Of a stretch of 64,000 nt of DNA, positions 4,097-60,031 are shown piece after piece. The first letter of the stretch is position 1, and every line of letters starts with the position of its first letter. Origin of the DNA: Macrostomum lignano (Eukaryota); assembly GCA_002269645.1 (NCBI GenBank), contig NIVC01003124.1, positions 1 to 64,000 on the forward strand, in the 5' to 3' direction. The notes below the pieces were generated by a model that saw nothing but the letters and a program-made list of their open reading frames with translations, did no database searches and was not told the origin of the DNA. Both the position numbers and the translations under genes were made by a program.

Positions 4097-4887
4097 CTCA
4101 TGGATGTGTCAAGTCCACCTGGTCTCACTAATTCCCATTTACAGTCTCTGACACCACAGCAACCAAGCTCAGTATTTTTACATTAAGATGATCGATTGAC
4201 TCTGAAATGTATGAAGTATTGAATAGTTAGCTCAGTATATAGCTCGTATATAGAATGTACCGCACCTAATTCAGTTTAATTTCACATTGGCATTAATAAA
4301 TTAAATTATAGAATATATTTTCCCCTTAAAAACGCTACTGAGACAAGAATCGCTAAAGAATCATAGCAAACAAAATCATAGCAAACAACTCACTACTCGT
4401 ACAACTAAGAGGTAACTGTTGAGTCACGTGAGTTGCAGAATTGTAAAAAGAGTCGCTGTGTTAGCGCTTAACTTTCTACTAACTCAAGTAGACTTAAATA
4501 GAGTTGTTATAAATGCGAAATTCGATTCTAATTAGGCGACGCAGATGTACTTTAGACGCAACTCAGTGACTCTACAGCAACTCTGGCACGCCTCAGATCT
4601 GACTCTACGATCCCAGAGTCGTTTCAGAGTCTCAGACAAAAAACGCCTCAAATTGACTCTTAGGCGACTTGTACCGTGACATCCAGAGTCACTTCTTTCC
4701 TATTTTACCTGTGTTACCTACAACGATTATGGGACGCTGAAATTTGCCTGTTTTCATCGGGTTTGTTATCTGTCTTATTAATATGTATATAAATAATTAT
4801 TAACAATTCCAGTTTGCATCCCCTTCCCCTGCATGCTTGCGACAAAGTTCATTAAATAATTTTAAATAATCAAAACAATTTCACCTG

Positions 4888-38298: not shown

Positions 38299-38772
38299 AT
38301 GAGCAACTTGGCTCTGAACGCAATCAGCATCACAGTCGGCCTGTTTTTTCTATTCTTCGGCATGCTGAAGCTGTGCCCGCTATTCTCCGATCAGCTTTAC
38401 CGAGACATGAGAAAGATATTTATTCAAACAGCCGGCACATTCCCGTTGCATTCCATCACCGGTTGGGCGCCTAATCCTCATTCTTGGCGCCGAGTGTACG
38501 GTTCGGCAGAATCGGTTGCTGGGCTGTTGCTAGCCGTGTGTCCCGGGCCAATAAGAGATGCCAGCAATCTAGCCCTGCTGGGCCTGTTATTAATTAATTT
38601 ACACGCTGTGTGGAGTCTTGGCCAAGGATTGAAGGAAGCTTCGCACGGAATGGTATTCGGTCTATTGTTGCTATGCCGCTTAGTGATTCGAGTGCAGGTG
38701 TGGCAGCGGGAACGCGAACTGGCGGCCGAGACGGCAGAACTCGAGCAGACTTATGGAAAGAAGAATAGTTGA
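38299..38772 (+). CDS. TMEM35: TMEM35/NACHO nicotinic acetylcholine receptor chaperone (DoxX-like), single exon, 157 aa
   Basis: LGLFF-type first helix (VGLFFLFFGMLKLCP), WRRVYGSAE..AG, HGMVFGLLLLCRL; four hydrophobic segments; C-terminal KKNS. Confidence 0.85.
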   Translation: MSNLALNAISITVGLFFLFFGMLKLCPLFSDQLYRDMRKIFIQTAGTFPLHSITGWAPNPHSWRRVYGSAESVAGLLLAVCPGPIRDASNLALLGLLLINLHAVWSLGQGLKEASHGMVFGLLLLCRLVIRVQVWQRERELAAETAELEQTYGKKNS

Positions 38773-40119: not shown

Positions 40120-43100
40120 TTATTTGCAGTTAATTCTTCTTAACTTCTTAGTTGGAGTTCCGGTCAGCATATCAAGCGACTTCCACTTTTTCCAATGCTT
40201 AAACAGCCGATGCAGTAGGCGCGATTTCCACGAAAGGAATTTGCGTGGACAGGTGGCACATCGTCTGACAATGGCTGGAATTTTTGGGTCAGAATATTTC
40301 GATTTTAGATTGAGGAATATGTAGCATTTTGCTTTAGAACTGATGCAATGAACTGAAGAATCTCTTTATTTTTCAAACCTAAACGGATTGTACAACCTTA
40401 GTGGTGAGCGTCTTGCTCCCGACTGAAAGGTCCACTGGGAACCATTTCTGTCTGAGCAAGACACAACTCTGCATTGCTTCAGTTCCCCAAGTTGTAAATG
40501 GGTGCCAGCATTAGCTGGGGTAATTGAGGGGTTGTGGGTGGCGACCCCCCCCCCTCCCCCCAGTCCTTGCACTGAACAGCCGTACGCAGCCTTCAGATGC
40601 GCCGCGCAATAGCTGCGGCTGAGCTGTCGGTTGCACATCTGGTGGCTATCCAAGTATTCTGGTTAGGTACCCATTGAAGTGACTCAATTAAGGACTTAAG
40701 CGTCGGCATCAAGGCCGGAGCACCATGCAGCAGCGGTGGAAATGCAACAATCTTAGAAATGCAAAAAATGATTAAAAAATCCCGCCTCACACGTCGATTT
40801 CTTGTGACGCGTCGTTCGAACCGATGCTTTACCGATGCTGATTTCGTTGAGTCGTCTCGATCGTCTTGATGACGTCATTGTCGTTGCGCCATTGATGACT
40901 GGATGGGACGTTTTCTCGGCTGCCGAATTCTGACGGGGTGACGTCACTGGCTCGCTGCTCCGGCTGACCAGAGCCGTCAAGTGAACCAACCGATGACTTG
41001 TCAGGTCGTCCTCTTTTGTGAAGCCTTTGTCGCACACCTGACAGGTGAATTTTCCGTTCACTTTGCTGAAGTAGAAGCCGGACAGATCGCGAGAGGATGT
41101 CGAGGATGTGGATGCCGTCACTGACGATGCAGGTGCCTTTGGATGCGCTATCCGTGATGTTGCTGTTGAGGTGATCGAAGCAGATGCTGATGCTGAGGCA
41201 GAAGCAGTGGCAGTGGCGGCAGCCATGACAGTTTTTGTCGCTTCAAAGGCCAGCGAATTGAGCTGAGCATAGGCCATCGCTAGAGAGTCGGCCGAGGATG
41301 CTGTCGGCTTGATGTTAGCACAGGCGGCGGTCGTCGGTGGCGGCGCGGAGACGGCGTGCTGCTCAACCAGGTGCGTCCTGAGTTGAGCCGGGCTGTCAAA
41401 AGTCTGGATGCAGAATGGGCAAAGCGTCGCCTTGGTAACGTCGCATGCGTCACATAGCAACGGAGCGGCAGCGTCCATGGATTTGCGTTTTAGCGTCGTT
41501 ATTAACGACGTTGAAGTCTTTGCAACTGGTCGTCCGCAGGTTGTACAACGATGTGCCGCTGTTGTTGATTGAACTTTTGAACTCTCATCAGATCGACGCT
41601 TTGCGTTTTGTTCAGCGTCGATAGCGCTTACATGGCTATGGTGATTGTTGCCGGTATGATCGTGCTGAGGCGGTACTGGCTGAGTTTGATGTCGATGACG
41701 CGTCAGTTTGTGCTGTTCCAGCTGACTGTGGCTGCCGAATCTGGCAGGGTTGGGAGTTGGTGGGTGTGGCGCTGGACAAAGTAATGCAAAAGACACAGTC
41801 ACACCGAGTCATTTTCGGGTGAAAGACAACCTCAGAAGGAGCTCCTGAGCACTGATGATGCGCTATGATGAAATTGTCATTCAAAAATTTAATAAATCGC
41901 TTACTTTTCGTCGCAAATCTTGCACCAATGCTGCTGCAGTTGTTTATCCGCGTCAGCTCCCACCTTGCCGAAAACTCGGTGCACCGTCTTCAAATGTCGA
42001 TCCAATTCAGAATTGCTCCTAGCTTGGTGACCGCAATAGGAGCAGCAATGATGATGCAATAGCGACGGCTTCGCCTGTTTCTGCTGGCTACCATGATTTG
42101 TTGCTTCAGCCGAATTTGTTGTTGCTGTTGTGGTTTGCGCTTCGCAATCTGACTCTCCATTCCCTAATCTGTGCTCGCGAACTTGGTGCTCGAGTACTTT
42201 ATGCTCGTCTGGGAATTGGCGGCCACAATAACTGCATAGTTTGGCCAGCTCTTGGGCCACTCTGGACAAAACTAGCGGCGATGGCTGCTGCAGATGAGGC
42301 TGAGGGGTCGACTGGCGCGGTGTAGGGGCGAAATTGAAGGGAAGAGGGTTTGATTTTGTTTACTTAAGAGAAGGTGACACTCAAGAGGATGTCTAAATCT
42401 GACGAAGCAGTAATGTACACTGTAGTAAGGAATGTAACACTATAAGGAATGTAACACTATAAGGAATGTACACTATAAGGAATGTAACACTATAAGGAAT
42501 GTACACAATAAGGAATGTACGCTATAAGGAATGTAACACTATAAGGAGTGTACACTATAAGGAGTGTACACTATAAGGAGTATACACTATAAGGAATGTA
42601 CACTATAAGGAGTGTACACTATAAGGAATGTACACTATAAGGAGTGTACACTAAAAGAAATATAACACTATAAGGAATGTAACACTATATAAGCGACAAA
42701 AGCCAATATTCACCTGGCGTTCCTTCTCCTTCGTGTTCGATTGTCGCTTTTCCGATTGCTGCTGCTGCTGCTGCGCTATTAGGGGCAGAGATGTCGGTAT
42801 TGTTTGCGACGGCACCTGCGGCGGCGGAGCTGCGGCGTAGTTGGCGCCGGCGGCGGCAAAGTGAGCGCCGACCAGGTGCTCGTACAGGTCGCCATGCCGG
42901 TCGAACAGCCGCCCGGGGCAGAGCGCGCAGGCCAGATTGCGCCTCTCCTGCGCGTGAACCCGGAGGAAGTGCGCCTCAGCCGAGTCGGCCGTCTCGGACA
43001 GGACGCCGCAGCCGACGGCGGAGCAGCGGTACACCTGGGCAGTGTGCACCTGACTAGCGTGAGCTCTCAGACTCTCCGGATCCCGGCACTGGCATCCGCA

Positions 43101-46100
43101 CACGCCGCAGGCGTACTGACACTCCTGCCTAGCGCAGTGCGCGATCAGATGGTAGACCGCTTCGCTCTGTTTAGTTGCTAGGGCGCCACAGAAGCCGCAG
43201 ATGGACGGAGAAAACGGAGTTGATTGGGCCAGCAGAGCTGCTTCGGGAGCACCGATTTGATGCAGTGGATAGTGCTGCTGCTGCTGCTGATGCTGATGAT
43301 GAAGGTAGAGGCTGAATTCTGCCGCCGAATCCACGGCAAGCTGCGACGTCTGTGGCGACGCGATGATTGACACGTTGTTAGTGTCCGTTGCTAGGGCGTT
43401 GCTATCCGCGCTTAGTCTACTACTGTTAGTAGGGCTTTGGTTCTGATTTTCGAGGAGGTCGACTTCTTGGTGGCTGAGTTGCGTTTCTGCGCAGCATTTT
43501 GATGCTGAGGTTGAAGCTGATGACGAATGGTGCTTGATGTCACTGTGCTGCTGGCTTGCCGAGCTTGACGAGTCTGAAAGGTTGATTAAAAAAGGAATAT
43601 GTTAGAAGGCTGGGTGTTAGAGGTACTCAACTTTGAACATTCAAACTTATAAGTATAATACATCTTATGTCAAGACGGAATGAGATCAGACATGAGCAAT
43701 CAAGATAGAATGACATGAGACTTGATAAATCTGAGATAGAATGAGATAGGACATGAGAAATGAAGATAGTGTGAGATGAGACATGATAAATCCATATTGA
43801 ATGAGATAGGACATGAGAAATCAAAATAGAATGAAATAGGACATCAGAAATCCAAGATGGAATGAGATCAGACATGAGAAATCCATATCGAATGAGATGA
43901 GACTTGATAAATCCGAGATGGATTGAGATAGGACATGAGAAATGAAGATAGAATGAGATGAGACATTAGAAATCAAGACTGAATAAAAACAAGAATTAAT
44001 GAGATGAGACGTGATACATCATGATAGAATAAGATGAGACATGAGAAATCATTGAGAGAATACATGAGACCAAATCTGAACTGATCTAATGAAGGAACAG
44101 TAAAAAGTTATGACGGAAATAATTCAGTTTGTGCTTTTTTTCTCTAAAAATTCCATAAAACGCTATATTTTCTACTTTGAGTAGCAGCTTGAAAATAGAC
44201 TCGCACCTTTTTCGTATTCAACTTCTTCATCGTTTCTATGGCAACGTCGTCGCTTCGTCATTTTCGCCGCTTCGACTACGACGCCGACTTCGAGCTCGTC
44301 CTCTTGCTCGCCGTCCATGGCCTCAATTGTCCGCCGACTGTCCGAGTTCGAATCCGATCGTTTCCTCTTTGCCGAATGAGTCCGAACGTGCGAGCGCAGG
44401 TGGTCGGATCGGACAAAGGCGGCGCTGCAGAAGGCGCACTTGTGCTTCCTGACGCCCGAGTGCAGCTGCACGTGGCGCTGCAGACTCTTCTTGTGCTTGA
44501 ACAGCTTCTTGCACACGGAGCAGCGGAGCCGACCGCTGCTGTCTGTGGATGACGGATCTGAGGATAATTCTTCCGAGTCTTCTTCTTCTGTTGCTGCTGC
44601 TTCTTCTTCTTCAATGTCGTCTGCTTCTTGTTCCTCGTTGTTATTGTCATTGTTGTTGATTGTTTCAACAACCATATGGTGCTGCGACCGCGGCTCCGCC
44701 TTGATTGGCCGGTTCAGTGAGGTAGCGTCTGCCGCACTGCCGCTGTCGCATTCATCTGTGATAATGTCGCATGTGTCAGCGGGCAAATGTTTTGAATAGT
44801 TGGTGTACACGCATAGTCATAAAGAATAAATGCAGGGAAGCTGTGGGCGCCCTGGCTCCTGAGCACTACAAGCGTACTCGTACGCAGGGTGTACAGCGGC
44901 TCTGACTTTCTGTCATTAGTCAGGAATCTTCACTCTCTGTGCCTTGGTGGACAGAGAAGTAGACGGGTGAATAGAGAAGTAGACAGGTGGATAGAGAAGT
45001 AGACAGGTGGATAGAGAAGTAGACAGGTGGATAGAGAATTAGACAGGTTGATAGAGAAGTAGACAGGTGGATAGAGAAATAGACAGGTGGATAGAGAAGT
45101 AGACAGGTGGATAGAGAATTAGACAGGTGGATAGAGAATTAGACAGGTGGATAGAGAAGTAGACAGGTGGATAGAGAATTAGACAGGTGGATAGAGAATT
45201 AGACAGGTGGATAGAGAATTAGACAGGTGGATAGAGAAGTAGACAGGTGGATAGAGAAGTAGACAGGTGGATAGAGAAATAGACAGGTGGACAGAGAAGT
45301 AGACGGGTGAATAGAGAAGTAGACAGGTGGATAGAGAATTAGACAGGTGGATAGAGAATTAGACAGGTGGATAGAGAATTAGACAGGTTGATAGAGAAGT
45401 AGACAGGTGGATAGAGAAATAGACAGGTGGATAGAGAAGTAGACAGGTGGATAGAGAATTAGACAGGTGGATAGAGAATTAGACAGGTGGATAGAGAAGT
45501 AGACAGGTGGATAGAGAATTAGACAGGTGGATAGAGAATTAGACAGGTGGATAGAGAATTAGACAGGTGGATAGAGAAGTAGACAGGTGGATAGAGAAGT
45601 AGACAGGTGGATAGAGAAATAGACAGGTGGATAGAGAAATAGACAGGTGGATAGAGAAATAGACAGGTGGATAGAGAAATAGACAGGTGGATAGAGAAGT
45701 AGACAGGTGGATAGAGAAGTAGACAGGTGGATAGAGAAGTAGACAGGTGAGTAAATAGGTAGAATCTTAAGCTAGAAGACACTTGACATGAGGTAGAAAA
45801 TAGTGCTTCATATTATTTCACCTCCGTGATCTGCGCATGGCAACTCAAGAAATGCCCGACTGCTGGATACTTAAGTCTTTCTTTCTCTCTCCCACTCTCA
45901 CCCTTGGCTGCTCATCCCAAAAGCTCCATCCTCGATCATTCTCTCTCCAGCTGGCCTCGCAGTCTGTCTACATGGAACTCTCCCTAACCCCCCCCCTCTC
46001 CCAAAAGAGTTCTCCCGAGAGAATTCGACAAGCTAAGCAACCTGAAAAGCAGCGCGAACAGAGGTAGAGACAGCAGCAAAAAGCATTTTGGTAGTCAAGC

Positions 46101-48770
46101 AAGCAATGCGAGACGGGTCTTTACAGCAGCGGCAAGCCGAATCCCTAGGGATATTTCCGAGGCTAGACAGGCTGAGGGAGAAGAAATGATTGTTTTCCCT
46201 GGGAAAGGAGAGAGAGAGAGAGAGAGAGTTGTCTCCCGGTCGCTCCCCCAATAGGGATTTCAGCTGCTGGAGACCGAGATGGAGACCGAGAGACGCTGGG
46301 AGGAGGCGGGTAGAGGATCAGAGAGCGGTTCAGTGAGAATTCCCTAGCGGGGGGGATCCGCGCGAGGCGCTCATGAAGGTCGAAGTTGGGAGCGGCGTGG
46401 AGCCTTGGGGATTTTGTTGGTCCCAGTGCAATCCCCTTTTTCACTTCCCGCACATCGCCCCCCCCCTGGCCACACACAGCCTCGCCTCGGTGGCGGCGGA
46501 GGCCGTCAATTCTGCATCTCGCGCGCGCTTCGCTTCTCAAAACACCTCCCCAGGGAGGACCCCGCGACGGTATTAGTTTAGGGAGGCTGAGGGCCGCTCG
46601 CCGCCCCCCTCCCAACCTCTCCCGGCCTGATGGGGCCGCCTGCCCACGGACGAATGATGGCTTTCTAGTATAGAGAAGGCTCTGGTCCGCTTTTAGACCC
46701 GTGCGATATATGCAATATGTCTAGTGTTAGCGGCACAGTATACCTTTGACAACAAAACAACACACCAGCTAATGACAATACAAACAACACCAACCCAACA
46801 ACAACATTAAACGGAGACCCCTTCCCAACACAAACGACAACAACACGAAAGACAACAAAACAAACGACAGTAAGACAAACGACACCACAAATGACAACAA
46901 TACAAACGAAAACATCAAAAACGACAGCAGCACAAACGACAACAGCACAGACAGCAACAACACAAACGACAGCAACACAAACGACAACAGCACAAACAGC
47001 AACAACACAAACGACAACAGCACAAACAGCAACAACACAAACGACAACAGCACAAACAGCAACAACACAAACGACAGCAACACAAACGACAACAGCACAA
47101 ACAGCAACAACACAAACGACAGCAACACAAACGACAACAGCACAAACAGCAACAACACAAACGACAGCAACACAAACGATAACAGCACGAACAGCAACAA
47201 CACAAACGACAGCAACAAACGACAGCAGCACAGACAACAGCACAAACAGCAACAACACAAACGAAAGCAACACAAACGACAACAGCACAAACAGCAACAA
47301 CACAAACGACAGCAACACAAACGATAACAGCACGAACAGCAACAACACAAACGACAGCAACAAACGACAGCAGCACAGACAACAGCAAAAACAGCAACAA
47401 CACAAACGACAACAGCACAAACAGCAACAACACAAACGACAACAGCACAAACAGCAACAACACAAACAGCAACAACACAAACGACAGCAACACAAACAAC
47501 AACAGCACAAACAGCAACAACACAAACGACAGCAACACAAACGATAACAGCACGAACAGCAACAACACAAACGACAGCAACACAAACGATAACAGCACGA
47601 ACAGCAACAACACAAACGACAGCAACACAAACGATAACAGCACGAACAGCAACAACACAAACGACAGCAACAACACAAACGACAGCAACACAAACGACAA
47701 CAGCACAAACAGCAACAATACAAACGACAGCAGCACAAACAGCAACAACACAAACGACAACAGCACAAACAGCAACAACACAAACGAAAGCAACACAAAC
47801 GACAACAGCACAAACAGCAACAACACAAACGACAGCAACAGACAGCAGCACAGACAACAGCACAAACAGCAACAATACAAACGACAGCAGCACAAACAGC
47901 AACAGCACAAATGACAGCAACACAAAAAACAACACAAACGACGCCAATGAGCAATAATAACAACACAAATCACAGCACAAACGACAAGCGACAACATAAA
48001 CCATTGTGTTCAGCATTTCTCTGAGAAAATCTGTCTCAATTTTTGAAAGAAAAATTTTCTTTGTTATTTTGAAGAAACAATTTCAGTGTCGGAGCAAAAC
48101 CTCAGCCAAGCCTTCCGCAACACAAACGTTTTTTCTAATGATAAAAACGAATTCAATTCATTGCCATAAACTAATGCGCAGTAGTTTCCTACAGGCATTA
48201 CAGATGCCACAACCGGCAGTAACCGGCTTCTCCGCGATGCAAAAATCTGTTTGATCCAAGAAGTCACTTAAATTTATACTTTTCTGCTGAAAATTTCAAT
48301 GCCCAATCCGCAAAGGCTGGCCGCAAAGACTAAAATCCCTTGGGATTGATCACTTTTGCATCTTCGGAGGAGGCAGAGCACTCTCGCGTCGTCAAGACCC
48401 CTGGTTTGAATCCAAGGGCCCGCGTATAGTTATGAGATTCGCAGCCATGAGGGCCAAGGCTCAAGGCACAGGTGCACATGCCTGCCGATTAGAAAGTCAG
48501 GGCTGCTGTGCACCCTGTGTGAGCGTGTGTGAGCCCTCCGAATATGAATTCTCTGATAGCATACCAGGACGATTTTTTTAGAGGCTCCAGAGGGGCACAG
48601 TTTTATTCTGTAATCCCATCCATACTCAAACATTAGACATTGGAAGCCAAGACCAAGCGATACTCGGTCGATAAACAACACTCACCTGCGGCAACGACTA
48701 CATCGACACCAAGAATGCCGGACATTCGGCTGTACTGCGACTGCGGCGCCAGCTGTTTCCGACGGCCCAT
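40120..48770 (-). CDS. ZNF423: ZNF423/ZNF521 (Oaz)-like multi-C2H2 zinc-finger transcription factor, 6 exons, ~1001 aa
   Basis: Exons 48770-48686, 44755-44207, 43573-42714, 42311-41905 (acceptor ambiguous among nearby in-frame AGs), 41740-40791, 40274-40120; 3006 nt in frame. N-terminal MGRRKQLAP; fingers CKKLFKHKKSLQRHVQLHSG..CSAAFVRSDHLRSHVRTH match the ZNF423/521 finger pair. Confidence 0.8.
40392..40655 (+). mobile_element. CORE-type (MIR-core-like) tRNA SINE in Oaz intron 5
   Basis: tRNA-like head CCTTAGTGGTGAGCGTCTTGCTCCCGA; core TGAGCAAGACACAACTCTGCATTGCTTCAGTTCCCCAAGTTGTAAATGGG resembles the MIR core; second copy at 7100-7312. Confidence 0.75.
42415..42690. repeat. 16/17-bp minisatellite in Oaz intron 3
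   Basis: Unit ACACTATAAGGAATGT(A). Confidence 0.95.
43660..44070. repeat. Degenerate tandem repeat in Oaz intron 2
   Basis: Recurrent GAGATGAGACATGAGAAATC. Confidence 0.8.
44830..44935 (-). mobile_element. Fragment of SINE family 2
   Basis: Reverse complement GAAAGTCAGAGCCGCTGTACACCCTG matches 24300-24660 and 48360-48560. Confidence 0.6.
44950..45745. repeat. 20-bp minisatellite in Oaz intron 1
   Basis: Unit AGACAGGTGGATAGAGAA(G/T/A)T, ~40 copies. Confidence 0.97.
46750..47995. repeat. A/C-rich low-complexity tandem repeat in Oaz intron 1
   Basis: Units ACAAACGACAACAGCACAAACAGCAACAAC. Confidence 0.95.
48360..48560 (+). mobile_element. SINE family 2 copy in Oaz intron 1
   Basis: B box GGTTTGAATCC; body GTGCACATGCCTGCCGATTAGAAAGTCAGGGCTGCTGTGCACCCTGTGTGAG. 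Confidence 0.65.
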
Positions 48771-49849
48771 GACTGTCGTTACTGCCTGAGAATCCCCAAC
48801 TGGGAGCAACCAATGTGGAATTGGGAAATTCCTAATGTCTATATTCTATATAAATACAGATGAAGCTGCGGCTCCAGGCGATGGGGGAGGAGGGGTGGCT
48901 GTGTTTGGGGAGGGCGGCTGCGGCAGGCACGGGGGCTCTCAATTCATCCAAATCCCATTGGGGAATTCCAAGAGCGGCCTCGGCTCCATTCTCCATTCAG
49001 GCGGTGGGGAGCTTCGGGTTGGGGGGGAGATGAAATAGGCTGGGGCCGACCGACCCCCCCCCCCCCGAAAGCTTTTGGCGACGGCCCCGAGGGACCCTTG
49101 TAAACGCGGGGATGAGAACCGACTTTAGGGATGATGGGAACTGGGGGGAGCTGAGCCTTCCAAGATCCCTAGGGAACCATGGGCTTCCCCTTCCAGGCCG
49201 GAACCAATCCGCCGCAGCCTCGCAGAGCCCCCCACAGAGTCCGAGAAAATATATAATAAAAAGGCAGCCGAACTGGCTTGGGATGGGCGAGGCATCCCTG
49301 GGGATCGCAGGAGAGAAAGAGGGAACGGCAGGGAGATGGAGATGGGAAAAGGAGAAAGGCCAACAGAGAGAGAGGATATTGCAAGGGTCGTCGGCGCGGC
49401 AACCCGTTACCCGCCACCCATCTTCATATTCGCCTCGACCGTGTCCCGCGCGTGGGGCGACCCTTGGCAAGCAGGCATAATAGCGATCGGGACTATGGGA
49501 GCTGCATGGTTCTTCATTTGTTAGAAGGTCGGTGCAGCTAATTCCATGCATATATATGCTACCTGCAGTCGCTGTAAGATCAATAATTCAAGCTGGATCT
49601 GACAGTCAGGGCTGCTACAGCAGCGTGATTAAGACCAGTTTCTGAGCTGACGCCATGAGCTCGTGTTCCGCTTCGAGAGAGCTGCCTTGAAAACTGCATG
49701 TGGTGTGAAGCAATTTCACCCCGATCAATCGGATCCAGCGTTTCCATATGGCAAGGATTTGGATTATCTTCTTACTAGTAAGCGACAGCGAGAAAGACGC
49801 AAACCCAGAGACCTTGATGCGAAATCAAACAATTATTGAATTCCTTATT

Positions 49850-50980: not shown

Positions 50981-53900
50981 TTAAATCTTGTTGCAGTCCT
51001 GCAGAGTCAGCCGGGGCGCAATATTCATGCTCTGCAACTCCTGGAACAGCAGTTTGCAGGCGTATGGCATGCGAACGGAGCACACGGCGGTGCTGCTGCG
51101 GCAGTACTGGCACCAGGCCCGGCCGCAGAGCAGGCCGCAGGCTGAGCACACCTTAGTATCGAAGGCATCAGACGAGAGCATCAAACGTTCAACCAGCAGC
51201 ATGGAGGCTCCATAGCCGATCAGACAGTCGCGCTCCATCTCGCCTAGGCGTAGCCCGCCGTCCCGAGCTCGACCCTCAGTCGGCTGTCTGGTGATAAGAG
51301 TACAGGGACCCCTAGCCCTGGCGTGAATCTTATCCAGCACCATGTGCTTCAGCTTCTGATAGTAGATCGGTCCGGAGTACACGTAGGCTTCCATGGTCTC
51401 GCCAGTCACGCCGGAGGTCAGCACGTCCTTGCCGAGACTGTTGAATCCGTGCTCGCGCAGAATGGCTCCAAGCGTCTTTGAACGCGCCGTCCAGTACAGC
51501 CGCTTTGCTGCCCAACAGTTCAAGCAGTTTGCCGACTGTCATCCGACTCGGGTAGCCGTGCGGATTCATTATGATATCCGGGACGACTCCGTCACGAGAG
51601 AACGGCATGTCAGCCTGATCGACAATCAATCCGCAGACGCCTTTCTGACCGTGTCGGGAGCTGAACTTGTCGCCAATTTCTGGTCTGCGAGTTTGACGCA
51701 GCTGCAGTTTCACCAGGCCGTGATTGTCCTCGGTGTTGGCCACTATCACTTTCTCTACGTAGGCCGGCTCCATGCCCTGGATTGGGGTGTAGGTTGAGCC
51801 ATTTCCTATTTAGCTGGCCACACGAATTCAGATTCCAACTGCGACATGCTAATCCCCAACTCCCGACATTCTAATCCAAACTCCGACATTCTAATCCCAA
51901 CTTCGACACCATAATTCCTAACTCCCGACATGCTAATCCCAACTCTCGACATTCTAATCCCAACTCCCGACATTCTAATCCCAACTCCCGACATTCTAAT
52001 CCAAACTCCGACATTCTAATCCCAACTCTGAAATTCTAATTCCAACTCCCGACATTCTAATCATAACTCCCGACATTCTAATCCCAACTTCGACACCATA
52101 ATTCCTAACTCCCGACATGCTAATCCCCAACTCTCGACATTCTAATCCCAACTCCCGACATTTTAATCCCAACTCCCGACATTCTAATTCAAACTCCGAC
52201 ATTCTAATCCCAACTCTGAAATTCTAATCCCAACTCCGACATTCTAATCTCTAACTCCGACATTCTAATCCCCAACTCCGACATTCTAATTCCAACTCCC
52301 GACATTCTAATCATAACTCCCGACATTCTAATCCCAACTTCGACACCATAATCCCATCTCCGACATTCTAATCCCCAACTCCCGACATTCTAATCCCAAC
52401 TCCCGACATTCTAATCATAACTCCCGACATTCTAATCCCAACTTCGACACCATAATCCCATCTCCGACATTCTAATCCCCAACTCCCGACATTCTAATCC
52501 CAACTCCCGACATTCTAATCCCAACTCCCGACATTCTAATCCGAACTCCTGAATCATAATTTCAACTCTGACGTCAAAACCTAAACTTCCAACATTCTAA
52601 TTCCAACTCATCAGAATTTTGAGCCTAAATTTTAATCCCGACAATGAGAGTTCAATCCCGACTACGACATGATCTAATCTGACCAATGAGAGTTCGACCA
52701 ATCCGACATAACTATGCTAGATTACCTTGTAGTCCTGCGGCACACTCTTGTACTCAACATTACTATTCACGGCTGCCGACATTGTAGCGGACACAATCGG
52801 CATCTCTTTATTAACCAGAACCTGTCGATCCGAGACCCTAGCTCCAACGTAGGCTACACCGTCCGCTTCAAGGACTTCGTGGCCACGTCTGGGCAGTCCG
52901 GTGTTGATGTCCACCATGGGCCCCATCAGCCTGTCTGTGGACTGGTTGGCGTCGGCGTAGCGCTTCATCTGGACTGACTGCCGCCTGTTTGAGTTCGGGA
53001 AAATTTTTTTGGACTAAGAATTAAAAAAGAGTAAAAATCCACTAAGAATTTTTACAGCGTATAAAATACCCTACTGTTGAAACAATGCTGAAATCCCGCA
53101 TTAAGATCTCAACACTTAAAATCCTACAGTCAGAACCCCATCCCTAAAATCCCACAGTCAGAACCCCATCCCTAAAATCCCACAGTCAGAACCCCATCCC
53201 TAAAATACCACAGTCAGAACCCCATCCCTAAAATCCCACAGTCAGATCCCCATCCCTAAAATACCACAGTCAGAACCCCATCCCTAAAATACCACAGACA
53301 GAACCCCATCCCTAAAATCCCAAATTCAGATCCCAATCCCTAAAATACCAAATTCAGATCGTCTTTCCTAAAATCCAAAATTCAGATCTCATCCCTAAAA
53401 TCCCAAATCCAGATCCCAAATTCAGATCGTCTTTCCTAAAATCCAAAATTCAGATCTCATCCCTAAAATCCCAAATCCAGATCCCAAATTCAGATCGTCT
53501 TTCCTAAAATCCAAAATTCAGATCCTCATCCCTAAAATCCCAAATTCAGATCCCAATCCCTAAAATACCAAATTCAGATCGTCTTTCCTAAAATCCAAAA
53601 TTCAGATCTCATCCCTAAAATCCAAAATTCAGATCCTCATCCCTAAAATCCCAAATTCAGATCCTCATCCCTAAAATCCCAAATTCAGATCCTCATCCCA
53701 AAAATCCCAAATTCAGATCCTCATCCCTAAAATCCCAAATTCAGATCCTCATCCCTAAAATCCCAAATTCAGATCCTCATCCCAAAAATCCCAAATTCAG
53801 ATCCTCATCCCAAAAATCCCAAATTCAGATCCTCATCCCAAAAATCCCAAATTCAGATCCTCATCCCAAAAATCCCAAATTCAGATCCTCATCCCTAAAA

Positions 53901-56900
53901 TCCCAAATTCAGATCCTCATCCCTAAAATCCCAAATTCAGATCCTCATCCCTAAAATCAAAAATTCAGATCCTCATCTCTAAAATCCCAAATTCAGATCC
54001 TCATCCCTAAAATCCCAAATTCAGATCCTCATCCCTAAAATCCCAAATTCAGATCCTCATCCCTAAAATCCCAAATTCAGATCCTCATCCCTAAAATCAA
54101 AAATTCAGATCCTCATCCCAAAAATCTAGTCAGATCCCCATTCCAAAAATCCCATTCAGATCCCCATCTTTAAAATCCCAGTCAGACCCCCATCTCTGAA
54201 ATCCCAAATTCAGATCTCAATCCCTAAAATCCCAAACTCAGATCCTCATCCCTAAAGTTCCACAGTCAAATCCCAATCCTTAAAATCCCCACACAGCCAT
54301 ATCCTCTCCACCTATAGTAGAAGCAGCGACCAAAGCCGCGGTCAAGCGACGCCTTATTGACAACCAGAGCGTCCTCGATGTCGTAGCCCGAATAGGACAT
54401 GACAGCAACGCATGCATTTTGACCAGCCGGCAGCTCGTGATAGCCGATCAGTTCCAGCGGCTTAGTCTGCACCAGCGGCCTCTGCGGATACACGAGCAAG
54501 TACTGCACAGTGTCGAATCGTTCGTTCTGATTATAGGCCAGAGTGCCCATGGCCTGCTTGCCCATGGCGCACTGGTAGGTGTTGCGCGGGCTCTGGTTGT
54601 GATGCGGGTAGGGAATTATACCAGCGCACACGCCTGAGGACGGACAGGTTTTTTGAAGGGGCGATTCTTTAGAAATGTATAAACCAAAAACCGCAATTTC
54701 ATAAATCATAATTCATAAGCTAAAAACCCGAAAAACCCGAAAACATAAAACCCGGAAATTCATAAATCAAAACCCAGGAATTTACCAACTAAAAAGCCAA
54801 TCATTCATACAAAAAGCTGAAAATTAGTAAACAATCAACCCAAAACTTATAAACCGAAAAACTTGGAAATTTATAAACAATAAACCCGGAACTTTTTATA
54901 AGCGAAAACCCAGAAATTCATAAACAATAAACCCGGAAGTTCGTAAACAATAAACCCGGAACTTTTTATAAGCGAAAAAGTTGGAAGTTCATAAACAACA
55001 AACCCGGAACGTTTTGTAAGCGAAAAACCCGGAAATTCATAAACAATAAACCCGGAAGTTCGTAAACAATAAACTCGGAAAATCGTAAACAATAAACCCG
55101 TAAATTTATAAGCTAAAAAACCGGATACTCTAAAACCCTGGAACTTCATAAATAAAAACCCGGGAATTTACCAACTTAAAAGCCGAAAATTTATAAGCCA
55201 AAAAGCCAGTAATTCATAGAACATAAAACTTCATAGGCTTGTGAAAATGGGTTGAAAACTTTGTCACGCAGTTTTTATAATAAACAAAACTAACCCAGCA
55301 AAGTGAACGGCTCAATCTCCAAGTGAGTAGTATCATCGGTGATGTCCTTTACGTACACGGCAATCCTACAATCGTTCTCCTCGTTAACGTCCAAATACTC
55401 GATCAGCCCTTCGTGTAGGAAATCTTCCCAATCGCGCAGGCCGCTAGCCAGTTCGTCCAGATGGCGCCGAGCTACCAGAGGTCGCCCAGCCTCTACGATG
55501 ATGTACGGCCGACAGAGTCTGCCCCCATCCGAGGCGACGTGAACCGCTTTATGAGCGGCGTGACTGTGCACCGAGACGAACTGGTGAAGGCGACCGGCAC
55601 GGCGGAGTCGGCGAAGATGCCGGACTAGCCGGGGCCACTGCCGACAAGAGCCGACTAGCAGGCCTGGTTGGGGCAGAGAGATTGGGATATTGCCTGTTTA
55701 AAAAATCGCCCTAAACTCAGACACCCGATTCGCTCACCGGAGTGCTAGATTCTTGATACAGGAGAATCCCAGATCCCTAACACAGGGAAATCCCAGATCC
55801 CTAACACAGGGAAATCCAAGATCCCCAACACAGGAGAATCCCTGATCCCTAACACAGGGGAATCCCAGATCCCTAACACAGGGAAATCCCAGATCCCTAA
55901 CACAGGAGAATCCCTGATCCCTAACACAGGGGAATCCCAGATCCCTAACACAGGGAAATCCCAGATCCCTGACACAGGAGAATCCCAGATCCCAAACACA
56001 GGGAAATCCCAGATCCCTAACACAGAGAAATCCCAGATCCCTAACACAGGGGGATCTCAGATCCCTAAAAAAGGAGGATCCCTAACAAGGAGAATCCTTG
56101 ATCCCTAACACAGAGAAATCCCAGATCCCTAACACAGGGAAATCCCAGATCCCTAAAAAAGGAGGATCCCTTACAAGGAGAATCCCTGATCCCTAACACA
56201 GGGGAATCTCAGATCCCTAACACAGGGGAATCTCAGATCCCTAACAAAGGGGAATCAAAGTCCCTAACACAGGGGAATCCCAGATCCCCAACATGCGGGA
56301 ATCTCAGATCCCCAACAAAGGGGAATCCCAGATCCCTAACACAGGGGAATCTCAGATCCCACAACACAGGGGAATCCCAAATCCCTAGTATCGGGGAATC
56401 CAAGATCCCTAACCAAAGGTAAATCCCAGATCAATAACAAAGGTAAATCCCAGATCAATAACAAAGGTAAATCCCAGATCAATAACAAAGGTAAATCCCA
56501 GATCAATAACAAAGGTAAATCCCAGATCAATAACAAAGGTAAATCCCAGATCAATAACAAAGGTAAATCCCAGATCAATAACAAAGGTAAATCCCAAATC
56601 AATAACAAAGGTAAATCCCAGATCAATAACAAAGGTAAATCCCAGATCAATAACAAAGGTAAATTCCATATCAATAACAAAGGTAAATCCCACATCAATA
56701 ACAAAGGGGAATCCCAGATCAACAACAAAGGGGAATCCCAGGTCCTTAATCCAGCCATATCTAAAAAACAATCACCGTTAAGAAAGACTAAAAAGCTGTG
56801 CTCAGCGTGCAGCTGCTGACCCCGCAGACTGTCCACGGGTTCAACGCCCAGATCGAGTATGAGGCGAAGCAGCGGCGCGTCGTCAACGTCCATAGTCACG

Positions 56901-59900
56901 TGACTCATCAGAGCGAGGTTCTTGACTAATCCGCAGCTCTCGCCCTCGGGCGTGTCGCTAGGACAGAGCATGCCCCATTGGCTGGGCTGCAGCGACCGGG
57001 GACCGCTGACTTTGCGGGTCTTCTCGAACTGAGAATTGATGCGAGTCATGTGACCCAGGGCCGAGATGTAGGACAGACGGGTTAGCACCTGAAATTGATG
57101 AGCGATAGCTTACTTTAAGTAGGCAAGTTAATATTGCAATTAACTTTTTTCGGTGCTAGAAATGCTGGATATATTTTTAATCCATTTCTAATCCAATCAC
57201 AAAAAAATCTGACATCACGATGACCAATCGGACACGTCATTAATTTAAAAAATCGACTTTTTCTAAATCAATCGGAAAAATCTATGAACGAATAGACAAA
57301 CTAATGACCAAACCAGAGACCTAATGACCAAACTAACTAGAGATCTAATGGCCGAATCAGAGACCTAATTATTGAATTAGAGACCTAATTATTGAATTAG
57401 AGACCTAATTATTGAATTAGAGACCTAATTACCGAACTAGAGACCCAAAGACCAAACCAGAGACTTAATGACCGAATATAAAGAAACTAATGACCGAGTT
57501 TACAAATTAATTACCGAACTAGAGACCTAATGGCCGAATTCGAGACCTAATGACCAAACTAGAGACCTAATGGCCGAATTAGAGACCCAATGAGCGAACT
57601 AGTAATGGCCGAACTAGAGACCTAATGACCGAACTAGAGAGCTAATGACCGATCTGAAAAGTTAATGACCGAACTAGAGACCTAATGCCTGACCAAATGA
57701 CCAGAATTGAAAAATTGATGACCAAATAGATAAACTTATGACCGTTTCTACATGACCAAATTGCATAAACTTAAAATGAACCTACCCTACAAAATAAAAC
57801 ACAAACCTGAGTGACTCCCTGACGTTCCATTCGGAATCGTTTGATATTCCAATTGCCAGACGAGATGGCGGCAACCAAGCCGTTAGTGATCAGATCCTGC
57901 CGGATGTGCTTGTGAATGTCAAAGGCGGTCGCTTGATTTTTAGGCAGCATCTCGTTGGCAACGAAACGCAAATTATCGTTAAACTTTTTGAAATGATCTT
58001 CGAACAGCAGAGCTAACAGAGAGCCCGCCAATTCAAGCCTTTTATTGCCGTAGTAGTCGCGATCGTCTGGAGGGATCAGGCCGGCTTGGGCCAGGATCAG
58101 CTTGCGCAACATCAGGCACAGGTAGACGCACTTCTGATGGAAATTCCAATGTTCGACTGGCACGTGGGCTAGGACTATGTCCTGAGGGATTCGAATGGTA
58201 GCGTAGATAGGAGGGGGAACGATTTAAAAGTGCAAATATATTTCATAAGTACAAAAAGAAAGGCGCTACTAAAAGTACATATAAGGGCAATTCTAAAAGT
58301 TCAAAGTCTATTCGAAAAGTACAAAGACAATTCGAAAAGTGCAAAGAAGGGCCATTCCAAAAGTTCGAGGGAGGGCGACTCTAAAATTGCAAGGAAGGGT
58401 GATTCTAAAAGTGCAGTCTATTCTGAAAGTACATAGACAGTTTTAAAAGTGCAAATTTCGAGGAAGGGCGAATCTAAAAGTACAAAGTCGATTCTAAAAG
58501 TGCAAAGGGCTAATAAAAAATGCAAAGGAGGGCGATTCTAAAAATTCAAAGGACTATTCCAAAATTGCAAGGAAGGGAGATTCTAAAAGTGCAAAGAAGG
58601 GCTATTACAAAAGTGCAAGAAAGGGCGATTATAAAAGCGCAAAGATGGGGATATAGTAGATAGGAAGTAGATAGGGGATATTAAGGAAAGCTAAAAGGAT
58701 ATTATCATCTGTAAGAACAATTCTTTAAAAACTTTCACATCATCTTCGCTGTGCCAATACAAACCTTCAAAGTCTGCCTACAATCGTCAATACGACCTTC
58801 GGCGTCTTTGCGTTCTCGACTGGCTTTCCAAGCCGGGCCGTAGGTCTTCGCAACTCGGATCTTGTTAGATAGCCAGGCTAGGGCCTGATTCTGAGTGAAC
58901 AGCTTCAGCTTGTGACACTGCTCTAGACAGGGCAATAGCGCTGATAGAACCTCATCCTCTGTACCAATAGTCTGTACAATCTCTTGATCGCAAATCATGC
59001 CCATAGCTTTTAGTACAACAACAGCTGGCACTAGTTCGCCAAACGAATTGTGCTCGACGTGGAAAATGCCTTTCTTGGCTACTAGGCCGGTTTTAGATTT
59101 GCGCTGATGTGTACTGGATGTGACGCTGCACATTATGTGGCCTGTGGGAGATGGGGGAATAATTGGAAATATTATCCCCCATAACGATTTTGCGGACAAA
59201 AGTGACGATGTGGGAGTGTGACAAGAGTGACGATGTGGGAGAGTGACAAGAGTGACGATGTAAGTGTGACAAGAGTGACGATGTGGGAGAGTGACAAGAG
59301 TGATAAAAAGAAATGTGCCTACAAGAAGAATGCCGATTTTTATTTGAGAGTGACGAGAGAGCGACGATGCTGAGAGGCTGACAAGACTGGAGTGAGGAAG
59401 TTAGACAGAATCACAAGAGAAAAATGACACAAATGACAAGAGATCCTTCGAGAGTCTAGAACCAAACGTACAAACCTTTATTATCATCCTCAACAATAAT
59501 CCGATTCTTAGACAGCTGTTCCTGCAGTAGAATGACCTTCTCTGTGCCGCGAATAATAAAATAGCCGCCAGGATCAAGGGGACACTCGCGTAATCTAGTC
59601 AATTCGTTAGGCGTCTTGCCAGTTAACAGACAGTTGGAACTTCGCAGCATGATAGGTATGGATCCAATTGGCACACGGTCCATGTTGACTCTCTGATCGC
59701 CTCGTATATAAGCGATATCCACTAGTAAGGGAGCAGCGTAGGTCAAATCCCTAAGACGGCACTCGTGCGGGCTAATCTCTTTAACAATGGGCCCCTCTTC
59801 AACGGATGGCCTGCCAACGTAAATATTTTTATATTCCAAATACCAGCGCTGGTCTGCGTCGCACACGACTCTCTGATTGGCTAGCATGATAGCTCGAACT

Positions 59901-60031
59901 TCGGTGTTAACAAAATGATTAAACGATTCGATGTGCTGTTTAACTAGGCCGCGAACTTTTAAAAAAGCCGGCACTAATTTCCATTTGTCTTCGAGGCTTT
60001 TTATCGATTTGTTTAAATTATCGACGTCCAT
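50981..60031 (-). CDS. POLR3B: RNA polymerase III second-largest subunit (RPC2), 8 exons; last exon frameshifted at 51479
   Basis: Exons 60031-59476, 59141-58765, 58181-57807, 57088-56776, 55663-55295, 54633-54312, 52984-52726, 51776-50981. Motifs [81 protein letters not shown]. Total 3367 nt, not a multiple of 3. Confidence 0.93.
51830..52610. repeat. 21-bp minisatellite, POLR3B intron 7
   Basis: Unit AATCCCAACTCCCGACATTCT. Confidence 0.95.
53120..54290. repeat. 28-bp minisatellite, POLR3B intron 6
   Basis: Unit CAGATCCTCATCCCTAAAATCCCAAATT. Confidence 0.95.
54680..55250. repeat. Degenerate repeat, POLR3B intron 5
   Basis: Recurrent AAACCCGGAAATTCATAAACAAT. Confidence 0.85.
55760..56750. 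repeat. Two related 24-bp minisatellites, POLR3B intron 4
   Basis: ATCCCAGATCCCTAACACAGGGAA followed by AATCCCAGATCAATAACAAAGGTA. Confidence 0.95.
57290..57760. repeat. ~20-bp degenerate repeat, POLR3B intron 3
   Basis: GAACTAGAGACCTAATGACC. Confidence 0.85.
58200..58630. repeat. Degenerate repeat, POLR3B intron 2
   Basis: GCGATTCTAAAAGTGCAAAGAAGG. Confidence 0.8.
59190..59450. repeat. Degenerate repeat, POLR3B intron 1
   Basis: GACAAGAGTGACGATGTGGGAG. Confidence 0.8.

What the first reader, a model, noticed from the sequence alone, without database searches (positions are those of the whole stretch)
46142..49304. Five perfect EBF/COE sites clustered around the first exon of the EBF-partner gene ZNF423/Oaz
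TCCCNNGGGA occurs at 46142, 46547, 48336, 49166 and 49295, several with extended palindromic flanks (ATCCCTAGGGAT, AATCCCTTGGGATT), plus three one-mismatch sites. I noticed no perfect site elsewhere in the window. An 8-bp-specified motif is expected roughly once per 65 kb at uniform composition. The sites sit in two GC-rich non-repetitive islands (46100-46670, 48780-49550). Vertebrate ZNF423/521 bind EBF proteins and are linked to EBF in feedback regulation, so this suggests an ancient COE-to-Oaz circuit retained in this invertebrate.
Basis: partly seen in the sequence, partly recalled or inferred. Interest (0 to 1): 0.75.

Follow-up and report, generated by a model that had tools for sequence, protein, structure and literature searches.

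The report
COE-site cluster at flatworm Oaz/ZNF423 gene
Five perfect binding motifs for the COE/EBF transcription factor lie around the newly located first exon of an unannotated ZNF423/Oaz-like gene in the flatworm Macrostomum lignano, which suggests that a COE-to-Oaz regulatory link already shown in flies and mice also exists in flatworms.

Summary
TCCCNNGGGA occurs exactly five times in the 64 kb window, all within 46142-49304. Local shuffles expect 0.12-0.15, and 0 of 5000 reach 5. Only the 2-bp spacing is enriched, isolated half-sites are not, and the five sites have unrelated flanks.

The window is Macrostomum lignano (Mlig_3_7, contig NIVC01003124.1). The sites lie upstream of and inside intron 1 of an unannotated minus-strand C2H2 gene. 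I located its first coding exon at 48770-48686. It encodes MGRRKQLAPQ..., the N-terminal motif of ZNF423/ZNF521, and ends in a consensus splice donor. Two sites lie 400 and 530 bp upstream of the ATG. Three lie in intron 1 (+0.43, +2.2, +2.6 kb).

Finger-by-finger comparison with a scorpion ZNF423-like protein gives collinear matches, but the flatworm protein has only about 12 fingers. Direct COE/EBF input into Oaz/Zfp423 is already published for Drosophila and mouse. The scorpion gene also has a COE-type pair about 460 bp upstream of its MSRRKQ exon.

All sites are intact in two diverged copies of the locus, but divergence is too low (pS about 0.024) to be informative. Binding and regulation are untested. 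Verdict: a real, probably functional COE-site cluster, and a new member of a known kind.

The parts
49295..49304 (.). COE-type palindrome TCCCTGGGGA (extended form ATCCCTGGGGAT), 530 bp upstream of the ATG
   Evidence: Core intact in L001 and L002; the 5' flank changes A>G in both copies.
49166..49175 (.). COE-type palindrome TCCCTAGGGA, 400 bp upstream of the ATG
   Evidence: Identical in L001 and L002.
48846..48856 (-). TATA-like element TATTTATATAG, 76-86 nt upstream of the ATG. It implies a transcription start near 48820-48826.
   Evidence: Direct reading of the minus strand. The transcription start is an inference; no transcript data were available.
48686..48770 (-). First coding exon of the Oaz/ZNF423-like gene: ATG at 48770, MGRRKQLAPQSQYSRMSGILGVDVVVAA plus 1 nt (phase 1), then the donor G|GTGAGT
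   Evidence: First 82 nt 100% identical in L001 and L002; one Ala>Asp change at codon 28, donor kept. The scorpion exon 1 has the same architecture.
44756..48685 (-). Intron 1 (about 3.9 kb), holding three COE sites, GC island 1 and two minisatellites (44946-45749, 20-bp unit; 46826-47942, 15-bp unit). An alternative in-phase acceptor would put the 3' end at 44729.
   Evidence: The phase-1 donor fits the acceptors 'atcacag|AT GAA' (exon 2 starts at 44755) or 'ggcag|AC GCT' (exon 2 starts at 44728).
48336..48345 (.). COE-type palindrome TCCCTTGGGA (14-bp palindrome AATCCCTTGGGATT), intron 1, +430 from the ATG
   Evidence: Identical in L001 and L002.
46547..46556 (.). COE-type palindrome TCCCCAGGGA (14-bp palindrome CCTCCCCAGGGAGG), intron 1, +2.2 kb
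   Evidence: Core identical in L001 and L002.
46142..46151 (.). COE-type palindrome TCCCTAGGGA (12-bp palindrome ATCCCTAGGGAT), intron 1, +2.6 kb
   Evidence: Core identical in L001 and L002.
46195..46205 (.). Near-site TTCCCTGGGAA (1-bp spacer, or one mismatch). Other one-mismatch sites are at 46013-46022 and 49085-49094.
44175..44755 (-). Exon 2 open frame: acidic region plus two canonical fingers (LRCSVCKKLFKHKKSLQRHVQLH, HKCAFCSAAFVRSDHLRSHVRTH). The 3' boundary was not mapped.
   Evidence: These fingers match P0196 ZF2/ZF3 with scores 83 and 80; for the first finger the next best score is 57.
42654..43601 (-). Open frame holding exon 3 (four atypical fingers); boundaries not mapped
   Evidence: Collinear with P0196 residues 594-704, E 3.7e-5.
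41904..42359 (-). Open frame holding exon 4 (two and a half fingers)
40756..41808 (-). Open frame holding exon 5: C4-like CTTC-x27-CDAC, the 'FDSPA' ZF28-like finger and one more finger
50981..60031 (-). Upstream neighbour: POLR3B (RNA polymerase III subunit RPC2). Its 3' end lies 1.7 kb from the most distal COE site.

Best explanation
The five palindromes form a homotypic cluster of binding sites for the single flatworm COE (Collier/Olf/EBF) factor, which binds DNA as a homodimer. They lie in the promoter (-400, -530) and first intron (+0.43, +2.2, +2.6 kb) of the Macrostomum lignano orthologue of Oaz/ZNF423/ZNF521. In COE-expressing cells, COE dimers would occupy these sites and set the transcription of Oaz, a zinc-finger cofactor that in other animals binds COE/EBF and restrains it. 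That closes a feedback loop between a factor and its partner. Shown here: the sites exist, are far beyond chance, are specific to the 2-bp spacing and arose independently; the gene identity; and the exon 1 position. Inferred: COE occupancy, the direction of regulation and the feedback.
For: Statistics: 5 sites against 0.12-0.15 expected locally, 0 of 5000 shuffles reach 5, and only the 2-bp spacing is enriched. The core equals the published COE consensus TCCCNNGGGA / CCCnnGGGA (PMC4512700, PMC4312928). Four of five sites extend the palindrome beyond the core, as expected for a symmetric dimer. No perfect site lies at any other gene in the window or elsewhere in the 28-30 kb paralogous loci, so this is not a generic promoter word. 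The sites straddle exon 1 of a gene with the ZNF423 hallmarks MxRRKQxxP, the ZF2/3 pair, a C4-like segment and a ZF28-like finger in collinear order. The gene is constrained: frames stay open in 3 copies, all indels are multiples of 3, and pN/pS is 0.34-0.45. Precedents: Drosophila Oaz carries 4-6 Col ChIP peaks and its Oaz_Col enhancer dies when the Col site is mutated (PMC4512700). Mouse/human Zfp423 introns 3 and 5 carry conserved EBF/ROAZ motifs, and the intron 5 enhancer is Ebf1-dependent (PMC3675209). C. elegans unc-3 uses the same geometry of promoter plus first introns (PMC13192591). In the 81-kb scorpion ZNF423-like locus, the only perfect site (0.32 expected) and a second near-site lie 450-480 bp upstream of the MSRRKQ exon.
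Against: There is no ChIP, accessibility or expression evidence for the flatworm. I could not confirm here that M. lignano has a COE gene; I rely on the literature statement that all invertebrates have one. The flanking base is A/T-swapped relative to the SELEX optimum (ATCCC...GGGAT rather than ATTCCC...GGGAAT). The EBF1 GH loop reads that flank through the minor groove without sequence specificity (PMC4312928), so this is not disqualifying. Retention of all 40 core positions in the two other copies is expected by chance at P about 0.13. The planarian coe(RNAi) tables list no ZNF423-like gene. The gene has no annotation and no transcript evidence in the data I could reach.
Confidence: 0.6

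Rival explanations
1. The palindromes are autoregulatory sites bound by the Oaz/ZNF423-like protein itself, alone or in competition with COE. Vertebrate ZNF423 binds an inverted repeat with the same CCCNNGGG core and occupies such sites in its own introns.
For: ZNF423 fingers 2-8 bind inverted GCACCC repeats (10.1101/2020.03.09.984518). Zfp423 occupies overlapping ROAZ/EBF motifs in its own introns 3 and 5 and represses the intron 5 enhancer (PMC3675209). The flatworm protein keeps the two best-conserved fingers of that DNA-binding cluster.
Against: All five sites read TCCC/GGGA rather than ACCC/GGGT at the discriminating position, and none has GCA/TGC flanks. Only 2 of the roughly 7 fingers of the DNA-binding cluster are present, so the ROAZ specificity is unlikely to be retained. 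This rival does not exclude the COE model.
Confidence: 0.12
2. A different dimeric factor that recognises ATCCCNNGGGAT binds the cluster, for example a Rel-homology-type or lineage-specific flatworm factor. On this view the match to the COE core is a coincidence.
For: Three sites are perfect 12-mers with A/T flanks that differ from the COE SELEX optimum. Two perfect Rel/NF-kB-type decamers (GGGAAATTCC at 48823, GGGGAATTCC at 48960) lie next to the putative core promoter. The COE DNA-binding domain is structurally Rel-like (PMC4312928), so related half-sites are read by more than one family.
Against: I know of no other factor with a TCCC-N2-GGGA specificity. The association of this exact motif with Oaz/ZNF423 loci recurs in fly, mouse and scorpion (PMC4512700, PMC3675209). 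In the scorpion the flanks are canonical (GTCCC, ATTCCC).
Confidence: 0.13
3. The cluster has no function. It would be a by-product of local composition, of a mutational process that makes palindromes, or of an unrecognised dispersed repeat.
For: The islands are GC-rich and rich in C and G runs (CCCC 63 vs 37 expected). The genome is more than half repetitive (PMC5730564). Only about 125 kb of this genome could be searched for other copies.
Against: Block-wise local shuffles never reach 5. Only spacing 2 is enriched. The site contexts are unrelated and no second copy of the islands exists in the window. The islands are among the least variable non-coding stretches across the three copies (4.9% variable columns against up to 22% next to them).
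Confidence: 0.1

Closest known systems
Drosophila Oaz locus Col-bound cis-regulatory modules (Oaz_Col; de Taffin et al. 2015, PMC4512700)
   Same: Several COE motifs (4-6 ChIP peaks) in non-coding sequence of the Oaz gene, with the core CCCnnGGGA. The target gene encodes the COE-interacting zinc-finger protein.
   Different: In the fly, occupancy and site-dependence were shown by experiment. Here there is only sequence. The flatworm sites are concentrated within 3.2 kb around exon 1, all have the full 10-bp consensus, and the flatworm protein has about 12 fingers against 21.
Mouse/human Zfp423 intron 3 and intron 5 ROAZ/EBF sites (Cho et al. 2013, PMC3675209)
   Same: Clustered palindromes with a CCCnnGGG core inside the ZNF423 gene itself; intronic location; the intron 5 enhancer depends on Ebf1.
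   Different: The vertebrate sites overlap the ZNF423 (GCACCC) consensus and are bound by ZNF423. The flatworm sites fit COE but not ROAZ flanks, and they lie in the promoter and intron 1 rather than introns 3 and 5.
C. elegans unc-3 autoregulatory COE sites (PMC13192591)
   Same: A homotypic cluster of TCCCNNGGGA sites spread over the promoter and first introns of one gene in the COE network, acting as feedback.
   Different: There the target is the COE gene itself and the effect is repression. Nematodes such as Caenorhabditis reportedly lack a ZNF423 homologue (10.1101/2020.03.09.984518).
Scorpion (Centruroides sculpturatus) ZNF423-like locus, L004
   Same: A tiny first coding exon encoding MSRRKQ..., with two COE-type palindromes 450-480 bp upstream of the ATG. 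The flatworm has two at -400 and -530.
   Different: Only one of the scorpion pair is a perfect core, and there is no intronic cluster within the 81 kb. This too is prediction only.

Membership tests
COE/EBF binding site | Palindromic core TCCCNNGGGA (in vivo CCCnnGGGA) | tested here: met
   Five exact matches. Consensus as given in PMC4512700 and PMC4312928.
COE/EBF binding site | Fixed 2-bp spacer between the half-sites (dimer geometry) | tested here: met
   k=2 gives 5 hits; each other spacing from 0 to 12 gives 0-1 in the region.
COE/EBF binding site | Extended SELEX optimum ATTCCCNNGGGAAT | tested here: not met
   The flanks are A-TCCC / GGGA-T in most half-sites. This is an optimum rather than a requirement: the flank is read in the minor groove without sequence specificity (PMC4312928).
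COE/EBF binding site | Occupancy by a COE protein of the same organism | not testable with these tools
   No ChIP or DAP data. The literature states there is one COE gene in all invertebrates (PMC4512700).
ZNF423/ZNF521/Oaz orthologue | N-terminal MSRRKQ-type motif on a short first exon | tested here: met
   MGRRKQLAPQ at 48770 followed by a consensus donor. P0196 and its gene have the same architecture. The feature is described in 10.1101/2020.03.09.984518.
ZNF423/ZNF521/Oaz orthologue | Signature fingers of the DNA-binding cluster (LFKHKRSRDRH...AFSRSDHLKIH) | tested here: met
   53% identity over 51 aa, E 4.7e-13, against about 33% for other finger pairs of the same protein. P0196 ranks 1 of 202 ZF proteins, 177 vs 147.
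ZNF423/ZNF521/Oaz orthologue | C4-like CxxC...CxxC segment upstream of the EBF-binding fingers | tested here: met
   CTTC-x27-CDAC lies directly before the FDSPA finger. The published range is 10-31 residues (10.1101/2020.03.09.984518). This is a pattern-level match only.
ZNF423/ZNF521/Oaz orthologue | EBF-binding cluster (ZF28-30) | tested here: inconclusive
   The ZF28-like finger is the best match (66 vs 53). The following finger and a candidate terminal finger map ambiguously.
ZNF423/ZNF521/Oaz orthologue | Large finger number (21-36 in described invertebrate homologues, 30 in vertebrates) | tested here: not met
   About 12 fingers in a model of about 830 aa. Some exons may be missing from my model.
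ZNF423/ZNF521/Oaz orthologue | Reciprocal best hit at whole-protein level | tested here: inconclusive
   Whole-protein searches are swamped by generic poly-ZF proteins. The ZNF423-like protein emerges only from finger-specific ranking.
COE-to-Oaz regulatory module | Sites conserved in orthologous loci of other species | tested here: inconclusive
   All cores are intact in two diverged copies of the locus, but P is about 0.13 at that divergence. No other macrostomid genome was reachable. The scorpion promoter pair is supportive.
COE-to-Oaz regulatory module | Oaz expression depends on COE and on the sites | not testable with these tools
   Needs RNAi and reporter experiments.
ROAZ (ZNF423) autoregulatory site | Inverted GCACCC half-sites | tested here: not met
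   Only the core CCCNNGGG is shared. All sites have T/A rather than A/T next to the core, and none has GCA/TGC flanks.

The most novel reading that the evidence does not exclude
The COE-to-Oaz feedback link, including its cis-regulatory layout, is a bilaterian-wide ancestral module. The layout would be a pair of COE dimer sites about 0.4-0.5 kb upstream of the tiny MSRRKQ-encoding first exon, plus intronic sites. It would be preserved from flatworms (Spiralia) through chelicerates and insects to mammals, even where the Oaz protein has shrunk to about 12 fingers. That would make it one of the few regulatory connections between a transcription factor and its cofactor traceable by sequence across more than 550 million years.
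Probability: 0.3. Interest if true: 0.65.

Novelty: new member of a known kind. Interest (0 to 1): 0.45.

Why it matters
COE/EBF factors are terminal selectors of neuronal and other cell identities, and they are dosage-sensitive. ZNF423/Oaz is their best-known protein partner and antagonist. Direct COE input into Oaz has been shown in Drosophila and in mammalian cells. A strong, clean site cluster at the orthologous gene of a flatworm would extend that feedback loop to Spiralia and argue that it is ancestral to bilaterians. Macrostomum lignano is the one flatworm with routine transgenesis (PMC5730564). The prediction is therefore directly testable with a reporter of about 4 kb and five point-mutated sites. 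The work also reveals an unannotated, unusually compact flatworm ZNF423 homologue. No flatworm homologue is mentioned in the published survey of invertebrate ZNF423 genes.

Tried and rejected
(1) Two word-indexed homology searches with the ZF ORFs returned only generic C2H2 proteins. The exhaustive phmmer search was dominated by giant poly-ZF proteins. It became useful only after local mining for collinear, finger-specific matches.
(2) A PDB sequence search gave generic ZF structures only.
(3) Exact-protein look-ups of a window ORF and of the UniRef POLR3B representative found nothing. The cluster members PAA53148.1, PAA90256.1 and PAA88868.1 did work.
(4) Phylogenetic footprinting across the three M. 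lignano copies has too little divergence (pS about 0.024; variable columns 4.9% in the islands), so intact sites are expected by chance at P about 0.13.
(5) The dispersed-repeat idea was rejected as far as the held sequence allows: there is no second copy of the islands and the site contexts are unrelated.
(6) A half-site composition artefact was rejected.
(7) A non-coding RNA gene in the islands was rejected: no Rfam or tRNA hit.
(8) The planarian coe(RNAi) tables have no ZNF423/521/OAZ entry.
(9) A candidate terminal ZF30-like exon near 40170-40260 maps ambiguously and is left out of the model.
Full report
OBSERVATION. An exact search finds TCCCNNGGGA at 46142, 46547, 48336, 49166 and 49295 and nowhere else in the 64 kb. 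Whole-window dinucleotide shuffles expect 0.74, with a maximum of 3. Half-sites are locally dense, so I re-tested with shuffles confined to the unique sequence around the sites (45750-46825 and 47943-49847), including 250-bp block shuffles that keep local composition. The expectation is 0.12-0.15, and 0 of 5000 shuffles reach 5. A spacing control is the most telling result. For TCCC-N(k)-GGGA in this region, k=2 gives 5 hits and every other k from 0 to 12 gives 0 or 1. With the five sites masked, ATCCC/GGGAT half-sites are not enriched (11 vs 8.2). Three sites are perfect 12-mers ATCCCNNGGGAT and a fourth has one mismatch. Four of five extend the palindrome beyond the 4-bp arms. Forty base pairs of flank on either side of the sites are 16-33% identical between sites, which is the random level. 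The islands have no other copy in the window. It is a spacing-specific, dimer-type palindrome that arose five times independently within 3.2 kb.

WHERE THIS IS. The window is eukaryotic and full of minisatellites (77 TRF rows). A conserved neighbour, RNA polymerase III subunit RPC2 (POLR3B; Pfam Rpb2 domains), has Macrostomum lignano as its best database match by a wide margin (1527 vs 1175 bits). Three M. lignano genome copies of that gene were retrieved with 10-kb flanks. One of them, L003, is 100% identical to window 41330-64000. The window is therefore assembly GCA_002269645.1 (Mlig_3_7), contig NIVC01003124.1. The other two (L001, L002) are diverged copies of the whole locus. That fits the known redundancy of this assembly, which comes from a line with extra chromosomes (PMC5730564).

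THE GENE. Minus-strand open frames at 44816-44175, 43601-42654, 42359-41904 and 41808-40756 encode C2H2 fingers. No gene is called there in the NCBI record. Neither word-indexed search returned an identical or close protein. The frames nevertheless stay open in all three copies over about 1,000 codons, every indel is a multiple of three, and pN/pS is 0.34-0.45. It is a real, constrained, unannotated gene.

Whole-protein searches were swamped by generic poly-ZF proteins. Mining the 150 best hits of the exhaustive search for collinear, finger-specific matches singled out one protein, P0196. Its sources name it 'zinc finger protein 423-like' from the scorpion Centruroides sculpturatus.

- The flatworm's two canonical fingers match the equivalent P0196 pair (LFKHKRSRDRHIKLH.../...AFSRSDHLKIHLKTH) at 53% identity, E 4.7e-13. 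Other pairs of the same protein reach about 33%.
- P0196 ranks first of 202 ZF proteins for that segment, 177 vs 147.
- Finger-by-finger mapping gives a collinear backbone: flatworm ZF1 to ZF2, ZF2 to ZF3, ZF8 to ZF21, then a CxxC-x27-CxxC 'C4-like' segment, then ZF10 to ZF28 (the 'FDSPA' finger, first of the EBF-binding cluster). The other fingers are ambiguous.
- These features (MSRRKQ start, variable finger number, a C4-like segment before ZF28-30) are the ones described for invertebrate ZNF423 orthologues. That survey mentions no flatworm (10.1101/2020.03.09.984518).

THE FIRST EXON. A six-frame search for the family's N-terminal motif found, on the minus strand at 48770, ATG GGC CGT CGG AAA CAG CTG GCG CCG..., which reads MGRRKQLAPQSQYSRMSGILGVDVVVAA. 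It is followed by G|GTGAGT, a consensus donor in phase 1. Two in-phase acceptors lie at the start of the next coding block: '...atcacag|AT GAA TGC' (exon 2 from 44755) and '...ggcag|AC GCT' (from 44728). A TATA-like TATTTATATAG lies 76-86 nt upstream of the ATG. The first 82 nt of the exon are identical in L001 and L002, and the donor is kept. The scorpion gene has the same architecture: exon 1 is ATG TCC CGG CGC AAA CAG GCT AAC CCC... (MSRRKQANPRALKR) followed by a donor. Relative to the ATG, the sites lie at -530, -400, +430, +2.2 kb and +2.6 kb, that is, two in the proximal promoter and three in intron 1. POLR3B ends 1.7 kb beyond the most distal site, so the cluster belongs to the Oaz-like gene's 5' region.

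CONSERVATION. L001 and L002 each carry exactly five perfect sites at the homologous positions and none elsewhere in 28-30 kb. All 40 specified core positions are invariant. Neutral divergence between the copies is only about 2.4%, and 4.9% of columns vary in the GC islands. Full retention is therefore expected by chance with P about 0.13. The test is uninformative rather than supportive. No other macrostomid genome was reachable.

WHAT IS KNOWN.
- COE proteins bind as dimers to TCCCNNGGGA. The SELEX optimum is ATTCCCNNGGGAAT and the in vivo motif is CCCnnGGGA (PMC4512700, PMC4312928).
- In Drosophila, Col ChIP-seq gives 4-6 peaks at Oaz (the paper's table says 6 and its text says 4). The Oaz_Col enhancer loses activity when the Col site is mutated.
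- In mouse and human, Zfp423 introns 3 and 5 carry conserved overlapping ROAZ/EBF motifs with a CCCnnGGG core. They are occupied in ChIP. The intron 5 enhancer depends on Ebf1 and is repressed by ZNF423.
- C. elegans unc-3 autoregulates through the same motif in its promoter and first introns.
- As an independent check I fetched the scorpion ZNF423-like locus (81 kb, 32% GC). Its only perfect site (0.32 expected) is GTCCCTTGGGAG at 9524, and ATTCCCTAGGGG follows 26 bp later. Both lie 450-480 bp upstream of the ATG.
- The planarian coe(RNAi) data list no ZNF423-like gene.

MECHANISM. The most likely reading (confidence about 0.6) is that COE dimers occupy a homotypic cluster in the promoter and first intron and control transcription of their own cofactor, giving feedback. 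The A/T-swapped flank (ATCCC...GGGAT) is the main oddity. The EBF1 GH loop contacts that flank in the minor groove and contributes affinity, not specificity, so the flank is compatible.

There are three rivals. (1) Autoregulation by the Oaz-like protein itself. The sites lack the GCACCC flanks and only two fingers of the DNA-binding cluster survive, but this does not exclude the COE model. (2) An unknown factor that reads ATCCCNNGGGAT. Two Rel/NF-kB-type decamers do lie at the core promoter. (3) No function. No RNA gene explains the islands.

VERDICT. This is a new member of a known kind, not a new kind of system. Its value lies in extending a documented COE-to-Oaz link to flatworms, in an organism where the prediction can be tested by transgenesis, and in revealing an unannotated compact ZNF423 homologue.

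Noticed in passing
window 3295-4102: A MITE-like element of about 0.8 kb with 17-nt terminal inverted repeats (CATGGGTAGGGATGTCA / TGACATCCCTACTCATG, 94%). Its subterminal regions are rich in CCCCGGGG palindromes and its interior is AT-rich. It accounts for 8 of the 20 one-mismatch TCCCNNGGGA hits.
   Followed up: partly
window 48823-48832 and 48960-48969: Two perfect Rel/NF-kB-type decamers (GGGAAATTCC, GGGGAATTCC) lie at and just upstream of the putative core promoter of the Oaz-like gene. The only other unique match in the window is at 3377, inside the MITE-like element. All remaining matches lie in a minisatellite.
   Followed up: partly
window 46164-46178 and 46579-46593: A 15-nt motif TAGRSAGGCTGAGGG (87% identical copies) lies 22 and 32 bp to the right (higher + strand coordinates) of the two COE sites in island 1. 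It could be a partner-factor site.
   Followed up: no
window 40756-48770 (minus strand); L001, L002: The ZNF423/Oaz-like gene is not called in the GenBank annotation of GCA_002269645.1 at any of its three copies, and no matching protein is in the protein collections searched. The published survey of invertebrate ZNF423 homologues does not mention flatworms.
   Followed up: partly
L001 (NIVC01000173.1) and L002 (NIVC01000119.1) vs window 40.6-64 kb: The whole POLR3B-Oaz locus is present three times in the assembly at 88-98% identity. The copies differ mostly by unit number in the minisatellites and by small indels. L001 and L002 share many differences from the window copy.
   Followed up: partly
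window 55758-56749: A 24-bp minisatellite inside a POLR3B intron (unit ACAGGGGAATCCCAGATCCCTAAC) carries the everted arrangement GGGA-NN-TCCC and many Rel-like decamers. This shows that GGGA/TCCC words are common in this genome's repeats, which is why the spacing control mattered.
   Followed up: no
window 46100-46670: GC island 1 (61% GC, nearly invariant across the three copies between 46244 and 46560) lies in the middle of intron 1, flanked by two minisatellites. It could be an intronic enhancer, or an alternative promoter or first exon. From memory, vertebrate ZNF423 has alternative first exons with and without the MSRRKQ motif.
   Followed up: no
L004 / P0196: The scorpion ZNF423-like protein model (XP_023231301.1, 1877 aa) contains duplicated blocks. 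Residues about 232-336 repeat 127-231, and about 1424-1877 repeat 968-1425. They map to adjacent near-identical genomic segments, which suggests an assembly or annotation artefact rather than real extra fingers.
   Followed up: no
window 4888-5409 (+), 12.6-17.3 kb (+), 29448-31012 (+), 38299-38772 (+): Other genes in the window: a ubiquitin-conjugating enzyme exon (Pfam UQ_con); ORFs that read like a tyrosinase with a C-terminal membrane anchor (from the ORF translations only, not searched); and two ORFs with no Pfam match, one of 377 aa and one a 157-aa membrane-like protein. None has a perfect COE site nearby.
   Followed up: no
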